A stretch of 64,000 nt of DNA from Octopus sinensis (Eukaryota), in contig NC_042999.1 of assembly GCF_006345805.1 (NCBI RefSeq), positions 114,576,001 through 114,640,000 on the forward strand, in the 5' to 3' direction. The position numbers and the translations under genes are program-made. Below, piece by piece: positions 35,394 through 36,777 of this stretch. Numbering within the stretch: position 1 is the stretch's first letter; each line of letters starts with the position of its first letter. The notes beneath the pieces are model-generated. The model saw only the letters and a program-made list of their open reading frames with translations. It made no database searches and had not been told where the DNA came from.

Positions 35394-36777
35394 CACATTG
35401 TGCTCAGATTGGCTAATTCAGGAAAAGAAATTCATATCTGGGGTTAAAATAATCACCTGATAGTGGTTGGGGACTCGTTTGAACCACAATTTTAAGGGCT
35501 ATCAGCTAGAACCCAAATTATTGTTTGTCTTTGTTTATGGGGGTCTGGGTACAAATAATCAAATCAGGGCATATCGACCAAAATTGCCTCTTTGGTGAAT
35601 TGCGGTTAAAAGTGATTATCTCGTCAGCTTTCAATCAAGAAAAGCATCCATGACATCTTCAGAAGAATGTTCATCATGTCGCATCCAGCAATTGCTTCGA
35701 AACAACCCAGCCCAAGTTGTTCTGTTTGTGGTAAAGTTGATCACACAGCTCGTTCTTCAAAACTTAAGAAGATGTCTGCTTTGGCAGAACAATCGAGAAT
35801 CGAATCACTATATTACTGACTGGTCCATGTTACGCATATTTATTGTTTGACATTGTTGTTTCGATATTTGTTGTGAATAATAAGTGATGATTTGTCACAA
35901 TTTAGTGTAAATGACGGGGGAGGGGTAGTTTTCATTGTATTTTCCCTTTTTGTGGGGAAGGTGGGGTAGACTATGTTAAAGTTCCAATCCAGGGATTTGT
36001 TGGGTATAGTTTCTTTTTGTTATCTCGTGTTTTGGCCCTTCTTCAATTTCGGCGTAAGCAAGGCAAAATCCTCCAAGCCAGAACCTGACATTCCTAATCA
36101 GATTTTTACTCCATAAAATAGGTTAAATACCAAAATAAGTACTCATAAGATCAATTATTCCAAGAAATCTATTAGATTTTGAGTCCATTTTATGTTTCCT
36201 GCTTTATACTTGTTTAATCACGTCGGGGGTCAATAAATACCGATTTTTCCCAATTTTGGTTGGTTATGATGTTTGGTTCCCAAACTGGAATTATACTTTC
36301 TGTGTGGACTTTTAACCCCTTTGAGCTGATTTTTTTCCCACAGTTTACATAAAATGCTGGGGATGTCAAATAGGTTAGCCCTTAATATGTCGAAATTTGT
36401 AAGTATTTAAAAAAAATATGAAGTTTGAGGCGGTTTTACCAAAAATTTGGATATTTTTCCTGCATCCCCTATTTTTTCAAATTTCTCAAATTTATATTGG
36501 ACTATGCACTCTCGGCTGTAGCTTGACTGAAAGACAAATGCTTCTAAATAAGTTCAAACAGAGGTTTAAAATATTTTTTGTGAAAGAAAATATGATCAAT
36601 CATATGATACTCAAAAAAAAAAACCGTAAATTTCGTTAAAAATTGAGCTATAATTTATTTTAAACTCATGTTTTTTTGCTTTTTAATCTCTTGAGTTTAG
36701 AGAAACAGAAAATATGCATTTTAGACATCTGGGGGAAACTTTCAAAAATGATAAATTCCCACTCTGGGCACAATGTG
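35394..36777 (+). mobile_element. Non-autonomous Transib/RAG1-like DNA transposon (1384 bp)
   Basis: TIRs CACATTGTGCTCAGATTGG (from 35394) and CACATTGTGCCCAGAGTGG (reverse complement, ending 36777) are 17/19 identical. Flanks TGGCG and CAGCG are both one CpG deamination from CGGCG (5-bp TSD). Internal Transib/RAG1-like C-terminal coding remnant. Confidence 0.8.
35582..35819 (+). pseudogene. Transib/RAG1L-like transposase C-terminal remnant
   Basis: NCLFGELRLK [frameshift] LSRQLSIKKSIHDIFRRMFIMSHPAIASKQPSPSCSVCGKVDHTARSSKLKKMSALAEQSRIESLYY*. Resembles RAG1 NKLFRRFRKMNARQ, the Transib SRK.S.....ED(I/V)F.RLL.SSDP.ISS end, and the RAG1L Cx2Cx3GHx4C tail (compared from memory, not searched). Confidence 0.7.

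What the first reader, a model, noticed from the sequence alone, without database searches (positions are those of the whole stretch)
35394..36777. Complete non-autonomous Transib/RAG1-like transposon with RSS-heptamer-like ends and a 5-bp TSD
Seen: inverted termini CACATTGTGCTCAGATTGG and CACATTGTGCCCAGAGTGG (17/19 identical) lie 1384 bp apart. They begin with CACATTG, 6/7 identical to the V(D)J RSS heptamer CACAGTG. The 5 bp outside each end are TGGCG and CAGCG, each one CpG deamination from CGGCG. Established: CAC-starting TIRs with a 5-bp GC-rich TSD are hallmarks of Transib and RAG-like (ProtoRAG) transposons, the relatives of RAG1. Inference: this is a deletion derivative (about 190 bp of left end fused to the last ~75 codons and ~950 bp of right end) of a Transib/RAG1L family that was mobile in this lineage. 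I know of RAG-like transposons in bivalves but not in cephalopods; whether this one is new needs checking.
Basis: partly seen in the sequence, partly recalled or inferred. Interest (0 to 1): 0.9.

Follow-up and report, generated by a model that had tools for sequence, protein, structure and literature searches.

The report
Fossil non-autonomous Transib DNA transposon
A 1.4-kb dead, internally deleted copy of a Transib cut-and-paste transposon, the family from which the RAG1 V(D)J recombinase descends, sits inside a SINE repeat; it is real and correctly recognised, but it is an ordinary relic of a known kind.

Summary
Inverted ends CACATTGTGCTCAGATTGG and CACATTGTGCCCAGAGTGG lie at 35394-35412 and 36759-36777, flanked by TGGCG and CAGCG. 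The element interrupts the head of a SINE. Ten other SINE copies in the window carry CGGCG once at that point, so the 5-bp duplication is independently supported.

The 67-codon ORF at 35616-35819 is homologous (E down to 4e-17) to the C-termini of ~700-aa proteins. A profile of those proteins hits HzTransib transposase (2e-84), amphioxus RAG1L (3e-19) and RAG1. Their predicted fold matches only these.

Contigs from other, unidentified organisms hold related elements. One has the same two ends, a TGGCG-type 5-bp duplication and more of the transposase. Another has a decayed full-length transposase next to the same right end.

This is Transib proper, not a RAG1L-RAG2L transposon. The transposase is ~700 aa, and only ~0.9-1.1 kb lies between its stop codon and the right end.

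The copy is old. The source genome could not be searched, so copy number, autonomous partners and the cephalopod claim remain untested. It is a new member of a known kind, of modest interest.

The parts
35385..35393 (+). 5' head of the host SINE (AAGCTGGCG), lying to the left of the insertion
   Evidence: Matches the head AAGGCGGCG of the ten other SINE copies in the window.
35389..35393 (.). Left copy of the 5-bp target-site duplication, TGGCG (from CGGCG, C>T at a CpG)
35394..35412 (+). Left terminal inverted repeat CACATTGTGCTCAGATTGG. The heptamer CACATTG is at 35394-35400.
   Evidence: The same terminus occurs in L014 and L013.
35394..35584 (+). 5' terminal non-coding region of the transposon. 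It includes an A-rich nonamer-like block, AAAGAAATT(C), at 35424-35433, which is 23-24 bp after the heptamer. It also holds two copies of a subterminal motif, TCTGGG..AAATAATCA, at 35437-35455 and 35543-35561.
   Evidence: Element positions 1-90 and 141-191 are 73-77% identical to the 5' ends of the L014 and L013 elements. The nonamer match is 7/9 against a background of 1.4%.
35585..35617 (.). Interval that contains the internal deletion junction. The 5' end region is joined here to the codon matching about residue 633 of the ~700-aa transposase.
   Evidence: Homology to the 5' ends of relatives stops at 35584. Homology to transposase coding sequence starts at 35618-35619.
35616..35819 (+). 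Stop-to-stop ORF of 67 codons. It is the C-terminal remnant of the Transib transposase: the end of the C-terminal domain plus a decayed Cx2Cx3GH zinc-knuckle tail, CSVCGKVDHTARSS. The stop codon is at 35817-35819.
   Evidence: phmmer found 39 hits at E<=1e-3. The matches lie at the C-termini of 700-720-aa proteins. tblastn with P0003 residues 633-698 gave 57% identity, E 3e-16.
35820..36758 (+). 3' non-coding region of the transposon (939 bp), with no long ORF
   Evidence: Collinear with the 3' half of the L014 element: 62% global identity against 42% for a shuffled control, with blocks of 73-76%.
36759..36777 (-). Right terminal inverted repeat CACATTGTGCCCAGAGTGG, read on the minus strand
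   Evidence: The same terminus occurs in L014, and a CACTGTG variant occurs in L012.
36778..36782 (.). Right copy of the 5-bp target-site duplication, CAGCG (from CGGCG, G>A at a CpG)
36783..36941 (+). Remainder of the interrupted host SINE copy
   Evidence: Aligns to the SINE copy at 57487 at 74% over 161 columns, continuously across the joined flanks.

Best explanation
The segment 35394-36777 is a complete but dead non-autonomous element of the Transib superfamily of DNA transposons. It is an internal-deletion derivative. It keeps about 190-224 bp of the 5' end, the last 66 codons of the ~700-aa transposase gene, and the 939-bp 3' non-coding region. It is bounded by CAC-initiated terminal inverted repeats.

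It inserted into the GC-rich pentamer CGGCG at the head of a SINE copy and duplicated those 5 bp.

The mechanism is inferred from what is established for Transib and RAG, not shown here. A transposase supplied in trans by an autonomous copy binds the two slightly different ends. It nicks at the CAC border and releases the element, leaving hairpins on the flanking DNA. It then joins the 3'-OH ends to target strands staggered by 5 bp, and repair creates the duplication.

The C-terminal zinc-knuckle tail of this transposase clade probably contacts the conserved block just inside the heptamer (TGCCCAGAKTGG). This is by analogy with the CCGHC tail of amphioxus RAG1L.

The copy is now a fossil. Both duplicates carry CpG transitions, the left end has one private substitution, and the knuckle remnant has lost its conserved Gly and a downstream His.
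For: 1. The ends are real and non-random.

2. The 5-bp duplication is shown by ten paralogous SINE copies that carry CGGCG once, and by uninterrupted alignment of the joined flanks to a SINE copy. The target is 100% GC in a window of about 35% GC. This is the Transib preference described in PMC1131882, where Transib1_SP is also flanked by CGGCG.

3. The ORF is homologous to the extreme C-termini of 700-720-aa proteins. P0001 gives 64% identity at E 3.8e-17, and P0003 gives 58% at E 2.9e-13. There are 39 hits in all, and both sides end at the same ...IESLYY/IESMYY terminus.

4. Those proteins are Transib transposases. P0012 passes Pfam RAG1 PF12940. Profiles hit HzTransib 6pqn at 5.6e-35 and 2.2e-84, BbeRAG1L 6b40 at about 1e-16 to 1e-19, and RAG1. 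An AlphaFold model of P0003 (pLDDT 83) matches only HzTransib, RAG1 and BbRAG1L among its 49 significant PDB hits, and the top hit is HzTransib with TM 0.80.

5. The link between these ends and this transposase is seen in three other loci. L014 1096-3415 has both ends, flanks TGGTG/TGGCA (TGGCG with CpG decay) and transposase residues 299-568 plus 662-698. L013 has the left end plus residues 299-417 and 630-700. L012 has a decayed full-length gene (residues 1-702) 907 bp upstream of the same right end.

6. Side-specific differences between the left and right ends are conserved across these loci.
Against: - Only one copy is in the window, and the source genome could not be searched. Neither multiplicity nor an autonomous partner in this genome is shown.
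- The two duplicates are identical at only 3 of 5 positions. The 5-bp reading rests on the SINE consensus and on CpG decay.
- Only 66 codons of transposase remain in the window.
- The related elements come from unidentified hosts, and all of them are themselves decayed.
- No intact transposase gene has yet been seen between these exact ends. The left end of the full-length copy in L012 was not found.
- The mechanism is inferred by homology, not tested.
Confidence: 0.9

Rival explanations
1. It is a deletion derivative of a RAG-like (RAGL/ProtoRAG-type) transposon, whose autonomous form carries convergent RAG1L and RAG2L genes. On this view it is not a Transib proper.
For: It has a 5-bp duplication and CAC ends. 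The C-terminal tail has a Cx2Cx3GH knuckle like the CCGHC tail that defines invertebrate RAG1L. RAGL elements are known in molluscs (PMC7204232).
Against: - The homologous proteins are 700-720 aa and lack the long N-terminal zinc-finger/RING region of RAG1L.
- Their profile scores 287 bits against HzTransib but 72 against BbeRAG1L.
- The distance from the transposase stop to the right end is only 958, about 1065 and 907 bp in the three elements, with no ORF over 78 aa in the window copy. That is too short for a RAG2L kelch core.
- The ends do not fit the protostome RAGL consensus CACTWMCAAACKTYKBB beyond CAC.
- CCGHC tails also occur in Subgroup I Transibs (PMC9435367).
Confidence: 0.04
2. The copy was never mobilised as a short element. 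A full-length Transib inserted here and later lost its interior in situ, by deletion or abortive gap repair. On this view it is a unique remnant, not a member of an amplified non-autonomous subfamily.
For: No second copy with the same deletion junction was seen. The related short elements L013 and L014 have different internal deletions.
Against: Nothing speaks directly against it. Deletion derivatives with intact ends are the usual source of amplified non-autonomous families. The question is open because the genome could not be searched. This is a sub-variant of the best explanation, not a contradiction of it.
Confidence: 0.35
3. It belongs to another superfamily with CAC-type ends (CACTA/EnSpm, Chapaev, Mirage or hAT), or it is a chance inverted repeat in repeat-rich DNA.
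For: CAC-initiated ends are not unique to Transib. The ORF has no Pfam hit of its own.
Against: - The duplication is 5 bp, not 2, 3, 4 or 8 bp.
- The internal ORF and the longer relatives with the same ends are Transib transposase.
- The end pair is far beyond chance and recurs in other genomes.
Confidence: 0.01

Closest known systems
Transib superfamily DNA transposons. Examples are HzTransib of Helicoverpa zea, Transib1_SP of sea urchin, and the non-autonomous TransibN families of Kapitonov & Jurka 2005 (PMC1131882).
   Same: - The transposase is ~700 aa and homologous to the RAG1 core.
- The ends start with CAC and have a heptamer one base from CACAATG/CACAGTG.
- The duplication is 5 bp in a GC-rich target, and CGGCG is the very pentamer reported for Transib1_SP.
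- Autonomous forms coexist with internally deleted non-autonomous forms.
- The left end has an A-rich nonamer-like block at the RSS23-type spacing.
   Different: - The sequence family is new to the resources I could search. HzTransib is 20-23% identical over the structural alignments of the model.
- The transposase clade has a zinc-knuckle C-terminal tail.
- It also has an extra segment of about 34-44 aa after the first zinc-binding Cys pair. HzTransib lacks that segment, but it aligns with BbeRAG1L.
- The right end shows no convincing nonamer.
Subgroup I Transibs of Tao et al. 2022 (PMC9435367)
   Same: All three features they list appear in this clade. The ends are asymmetric. There is a CTT1-type CCGHC-like tail. 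A segment sits in the place of the alpha11-alpha12 region that Subgroup II lost (by inference).
   Different: - No phylogeny against their reference set was possible.
- By profile score the clade is much nearer to HzTransib, which has a different C-terminal tail, than to RAG1L.
- In many members the last Cys of the knuckle is Ser, with a His three to four residues later.
RAGL-B transposons of molluscs and other invertebrates, and ProtoRAG (PMC7204232)
   Same: They share the 5-bp duplication, CAC ends, a DDE RNase-H transposase of the RAG1 fold and a CCGHC-type DNA-binding tail.
   Different: - There is no RAG2L gene.
- The transposase is about 300-400 aa shorter.
- The ends do not match the protostome RAGL consensus.

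Membership tests
Transib superfamily | The transposase is homologous to Transib transposases and the RAG1 core. | tested here: met
   The window keeps only the last 66 codons, and these match the C-termini of ~700-aa proteins. Profiles of those proteins hit HzTransib at 2.2e-84 and RAG1L/RAG1 at about 1e-18. One passes Pfam RAG1. The predicted fold matches only HzTransib, RAG1 and RAG1L.
Transib superfamily | 5-bp target-site duplication | tested here: met
   CGGCG is single in ten paralogous SINE heads and double here. The joined flanks restore the SINE. The L014 relative has TGGTG/TGGCA. Only two complete elements were available.
Transib superfamily | Terminal inverted repeats that start with CAC and have a CACAATG/CACAGTG-like heptamer | tested here: met
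   CACATTG is at both ends, 6/7 to either consensus. The L012 relative has CACTGTG.
Transib superfamily | Preference for GC-rich targets | tested here: met
   The targets are CGGCG and TGGCG, in DNA of about 35% GC. There are only two sites.
Transib superfamily | A-rich nonamer 12 or 23 bp from the heptamer | tested here: inconclusive
   Left ends score 7/9 (window) and 8/9 (L014) against AAAAAAATC at 22-24 bp, with backgrounds of 1.4% and 0.12%. Right ends score 4-5/9, which is not above background. The copies are homologous, so they are not independent trials.
RAGL (RAG1L-RAG2L) transposons | A RAG2L (kelch) gene convergent with the RAG1L gene, inside the ends | tested here: not met
   Only 907-1065 bp lie between the transposase stop and the right end in three elements. 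The window copy has no long ORF there.
RAGL (RAG1L-RAG2L) transposons | A RAG1L-size protein with N-terminal zinc-finger/RING regions | tested here: not met
   The full-length relatives are 702-719 aa and have no such Pfam domains.
RAGL (RAG1L-RAG2L) transposons | C-terminal tail with the Cx2Cx3GHx4C motif | tested here: inconclusive
   The clade has Cx2Cx3GH. The final Cys is present in some members (P0012, P0015) and is Ser in most. The window copy reads CSVCGKVDHTARSS. The motif is shared with Subgroup I Transibs, so it does not discriminate.
RAGL (RAG1L-RAG2L) transposons | Protostome RAGL end consensus CACTWMCAAACKTYKBB | tested here: not met
   Only CAC is shared.
Subgroup I Transib (Tao et al. 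2022) | Phylogenetic placement with Subgroup I reference transposases | not testable with these tools
Only the three accompanying features could be examined.

The most novel reading that the evidence does not exclude
The element may document a previously undescribed Transib lineage with three traits: a RAG1L-like zinc-knuckle tail, a retained segment after the first zinc-binding pair, and asymmetric ends. These are the traits of Subgroup I, the proposed intermediates between Transib and RAG1L. On this reading the lineage was active in the window's host, reportedly a coleoid cephalopod.

Relatives elsewhere share 75% nucleotide identity, including in the non-coding ends. They sit in organisms that lack the host's abundant SINE. 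That would point to horizontal transfer among marine animals.
Probability: 0.2. Interest if true: 0.5.

Novelty: new member of a known kind. Interest (0 to 1): 0.3.

Why it matters
Transib is the transposon superfamily from which RAG1 and the V(D)J signal sequences are thought to derive. Its distribution and end structure in protostomes are poorly charted. A survey of 39 mollusc and annelid genomes found a single intact Transib ORF (PMC10294476). I found no paper describing Transib in cephalopods.

This relic, with the related contigs, gives a usable handle on a Transib clade that carries RAG1L-like features. The handle consists of end sequences, a target preference and a set of intact ~700-aa transposases from ocean metagenomes.

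For the genome itself it is a routine repeat annotation. It should be masked and labelled DNA/Transib, and it has no sign of present function.

Tried and rejected
- **Genome search.** No copy census, no search for an autonomous partner and no check of the host's identity were possible.
- **Pfam on the ORFs.** Scanning three of the element's ORFs gave nothing significant.
- **PDB search with the ORF alone.** phmmer gave only weak CCHC-knuckle hits at E about 1. The overlapping 83-codon frame gave nothing. I rejected that frame as coding.
- **Word-indexed protein search.** It found nothing with the 67-aa ORF, nor with the ORF padded with X to allow full-length candidates. Only the exhaustive HMMER search succeeded.
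- **Metagenome scan for the 19-mer end.** It gave 9 contigs with no similarity beyond the seed. I rejected these as chance.
- **Ends of other relatives.** No ends could be identified for the intact-transposase contigs L010, L011 and L016, or for L015. The left end of the L012 element was not found within 3.7 kb upstream.
- **Other negative searches.** Rfam found no RNA family in 35000-37700. The literature search for the SINE sequence and for the ENA analysis accessions returned nothing.
- **Alternative boundaries.** I considered a 3-bp duplication (GCG) and a 20-nt repeat including the flanking G/C. I rejected both, because they make the ends asymmetric at the border or leave no matching duplication.

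Full report
**Observation**

CACATTGTGCTCAGATTGG lies at 35394-35412. The reverse complement of 36759-36777 reads CACATTGTGCCCAGAGTGG. The two are 17/19 identical and the element is 1384 bp long. With up to three mismatches this pattern occurs nowhere else in the 64-kb window. Shuffled sequence gives 0.06 matches on average. The five bases outside the ends are TGGCG and CAGCG.

**Target-site duplication**

The flanks can be checked independently because the element sits in a repeat. The right flank continues as AGCTGTCAGAATCGTTAGC..., the body of a SINE with 11 copies in the window. In the other copies the body is preceded by the head AAGGCGGCG, with CpG-transition variants.

Here the left flank ends in AAGCTGGCG, which is a complete head. 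The right flank begins with an extra CAGCG before AGCTG. CGGCG is therefore single in the paralogous 'empty' sites and double at this site.

Joining the flanks and removing one duplicate gives a sequence that aligns without interruption to the SINE copy at 57487. Each duplicate differs from CGGCG by one CpG transition. A 3-bp reading (GCG), or a 20-nt repeat that includes the flanking G/C, does not give symmetric borders with a matching duplication.

The target is pure GC in DNA of about 35% GC. Kapitonov and Jurka reported the same pentamer, CGGCG, flanking Transib1_SP, and a general GC-rich target preference for Transib (PMC1131882).

**What the interior is**

None of the element's ORFs hits Pfam. 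The word-indexed protein search found nothing.

The exhaustive HMMER search with the 67-codon frame 35616-35816 returned 39 proteins at E<=0.001 and five at E<=1e-10. Wherever the hit is a long protein, the match lies at its extreme C-terminus:
- P0003, 702 aa, residues 633-698, 58% identity
- P0006, 716 aa
- P0015, 703 aa
- P0032, 719 aa
- P0034, 713 aa

An alignment shows the window ORF starting just after the conserved ...FQSGPAAR block and running to the same ...IESLYY end as P0001 (...IESMYY). tblastn of P0003 against the whole window finds only this stretch, 35619-35813, at E 3e-16.

**What those proteins are**

- P0012 passes the Pfam RAG1 model (34 bits against a cut-off of 25).
- A six-sequence profile hits HzTransib transposase at 5.6e-35, amphioxus RAG1L at 2.2e-16 and vertebrate RAG1 at about 1e-9.
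- A 24-sequence profile raises these to 2.2e-84, 2.5e-19 and about 1e-18.
- An AlphaFold model of P0003 (mean pLDDT 83, pTM 0.71) has 49 significant PDB matches. All are HzTransib, RAG1 or BbRAG1L. The best is the HzTransib hairpin-forming complex, with TM 0.80 on the target.
- The invariant columns include the GxDGSG, MxDGKM and SE..E.WNK motifs, the CxxC pair and the HxxxxH pair. These align with the catalytic and zinc-binding positions of the solved proteins.

These are Transib-superfamily transposases.

**Link between the ends and the transposase**

Contigs that encode the closest short hits carry related elements.

- **L014.** An element spans 1096-3415. Its ends are CACATTGTGCCCAGATTA... 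and CACATTGTGCCCAGAGTG.... Its flanks are ...gaggTGGTG and TGGCAtctg, that is TGGCG with one CpG transition in each copy. It carries transposase residues 299-568 and 662-698.
- **L013.** From the same sample. It has the left end (CATATTGTGCCCAGATTGG) followed by residues 299-417 and 630-700.
- **L012.** It has a decayed but full-length gene (residues 1-702). 907 bp after its stop lies the right end ...CACTCTGGGCACACAGTG, that is CACTGTGTGCCCAGAGTG.

The window element is 75-77% identical to L013 and L014 over both termini and the coding remnant. It is collinear with L014 over the whole 3' half, at 62% global identity against 42% for a shuffled control.

Left and right ends differ in a consistent way. 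Position 16 is T on the left and G on the right. Beyond position 19 the left reads C(A/T)AAT...GGAA.A and the right reads GAATTTA. Only the T at position 11 of the left end is private to this copy.

**Anatomy of the window copy**

- Homology to the 5' ends of relatives runs to about 35584.
- Homology to coding sequence starts at 35618.
- The deletion junction lies in between and removes about 630 codons.
- The stop codon is at 35817-35819.
- 939 bp of 3' non-coding sequence follow, up to the right repeat.

**Transib or RAGL**

The evidence favours Transib proper:
- The proteins are about 700 aa.
- They score far better against HzTransib than against RAG1L.
- The space between the transposase stop and the right end is 0.9-1.1 kb in three elements, with no long ORF, so a RAG2L gene cannot fit.
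- The ends do not match the protostome RAGL consensus beyond CAC.

The clade does share features with RAG1L:
- It has a C-terminal Cx2Cx3GH zinc-knuckle tail. The CCGHC tail is described for invertebrate RAG1L and for Subgroup I Transibs (PMC7204232, PMC10462144 and PMC9435367).
- It has a segment of about 34-44 residues after the CxxC pair that aligns with BbeRAG1L but has no counterpart in HzTransib.

Together with the asymmetric ends, these are the three traits Tao et al. list for Subgroup I. Placement in that subgroup needs a phylogeny that I could not build.

The left ends carry an A-rich block resembling the Transib nonamer at 22-24 bp from the heptamer. The match is 7/9 in the window and 8/9 in L014, against backgrounds of 1.4% and 0.12%. 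The right ends do not. I regard the 12/23-like reading as suggestive only.

**Mechanism (inferred)**

This follows from what is established for HzTransib and RAG. A transposase made by an autonomous copy binds the two ends and nicks at the CAC border. It forms hairpins on the flanking DNA and inserts the excised element into a 5-bp staggered GC-rich target.

The knuckle tail probably clamps the conserved TGCCCAGAKTGG block next to the heptamer, as the CCGHC tail of BbeRAG1L does with its TR2 element (as summarised in PMC10462144). None of this was tested here.

**State and age**

The copy is a fossil.
- Both duplicates have CpG transitions.
- The host SINE copy is only 74% identical to another copy.
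- The knuckle remnant reads CSVCGKVDHTARSSKL, where relatives have G before the His and another His downstream.

**Limits**

I therefore cannot give copy number. I cannot say whether an autonomous partner survives, or whether this copy transposed as a short element or was shortened in place. I also cannot confirm that the host is a cephalopod.

The related contigs come from unidentified hosts, in metagenome assemblies and Tara Oceans samples. None of them contains the window's SINE in 10-16 kb each, although the window has one copy per 6 kb. Those hosts are probably not close relatives of the window's species. Whether that reflects old vertical descent or horizontal transfer is open.

I found no paper describing Transib in cephalopods. 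A survey of 39 mollusc and annelid genomes, including two cephalopods, found one intact Transib ORF in total. I could not consult Repbase or Dfam.

**Verdict**

It is a new member of a known kind and of modest interest.

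Noticed in passing
window 8868, 20649, 21236, 27756, 34152, 36783, 37009, 37543, 50037, 56304, 57496 (start of the matched 19-mer in each copy): An abundant SINE has 11 copies in 64 kb. Its head is AAGGCGGCGAGCTGGCAGAATCGTTAGC and its body is about 160-220 bp. The GGCGGCG head offers exactly the GC-rich pentamer that the Transib used. Rfam gave no match for the copies in 35000-37700.
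   Followed up: partly
window 45692-48538 (-): An uninterrupted 948-codon ORF has a reverse-transcriptase domain (RVT_1, E 1.3e-27) and a weak zf-RVT hit. It is probably a young non-LTR retrotransposon copy. Shorter unclassified ORFs lie at 23974-24783 (-) and 60362-61084 (+); neither gave a reverse-transcriptase hit in Pfam.
   Followed up: partly
proteins P0001, P0003, P0005, P0006, P0032, P0057 (C-terminal tails); window 35718-35765: In most members of this transposase clade the last Cys of the Cx2Cx3GHx4C knuckle is Ser, and a His follows three to four residues later (...GHTARSxxH). A few members (P0012, P0015) keep the canonical Cys. This may be a CCHH variant of the RAG1L-type tail.
   Followed up: partly
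L012 2790-3171; window 35437-35455 and 35543-35561; L016 3171-3193: The 5' subterminal region of the L012 element holds 2.3 tandem copies of a 168-bp unit. The unit contains a GGGATCTGGGGC..AATTTC / AAAATAATCA motif. Two degenerate copies of the motif occur in the window element's left arm, and one occurs upstream of the intact transposase gene in L016. These may be subterminal protein-binding sites.
   Followed up: partly
L010 93-2201, L011 398-2509 (Tara Oceans metagenome scaffolds); L016 4001-6148: Uninterrupted 702-, 703- and 715-aa Transib transposase genes sit in marine metagenome contigs. They may come from active elements in unidentified planktonic or host-associated eukaryotes. Their ends could not be located.
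   Followed up: partly
profile A3 positions 402-445, corresponding to about residues 390-436 of P0003: A segment after the CxxC zinc pair is unmatched in HzTransib, where only about 10 residues fill the gap. It aligns with BbeRAG1L residues around 380-420. It lies where Tao et al. place the alpha11-alpha12 region that Subgroup II Transibs lost.
   Followed up: partly
L007 (metagenome contig Ga0247844_1033722), about ten sites such as 404, 848, 921, 995, 2318 and 2537: A 12-15-nt piece of the element's right-end sequence recurs many times in this unrelated metagenome contig. It looks like a short dispersed repeat of that organism. I treat the resemblance to the transposon end as chance.
   Followed up: no
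window, throughout (for example 959-1696, 9119-10032, 17410-18860, 40918-41518, 50317-50835): The window is saturated with microsatellite-like low-complexity tracts. They produce long spurious ORFs rich in Y/I/H/T or C/V. No convincing host exon was seen among ORFs of 110 aa or more.
   Followed up: no
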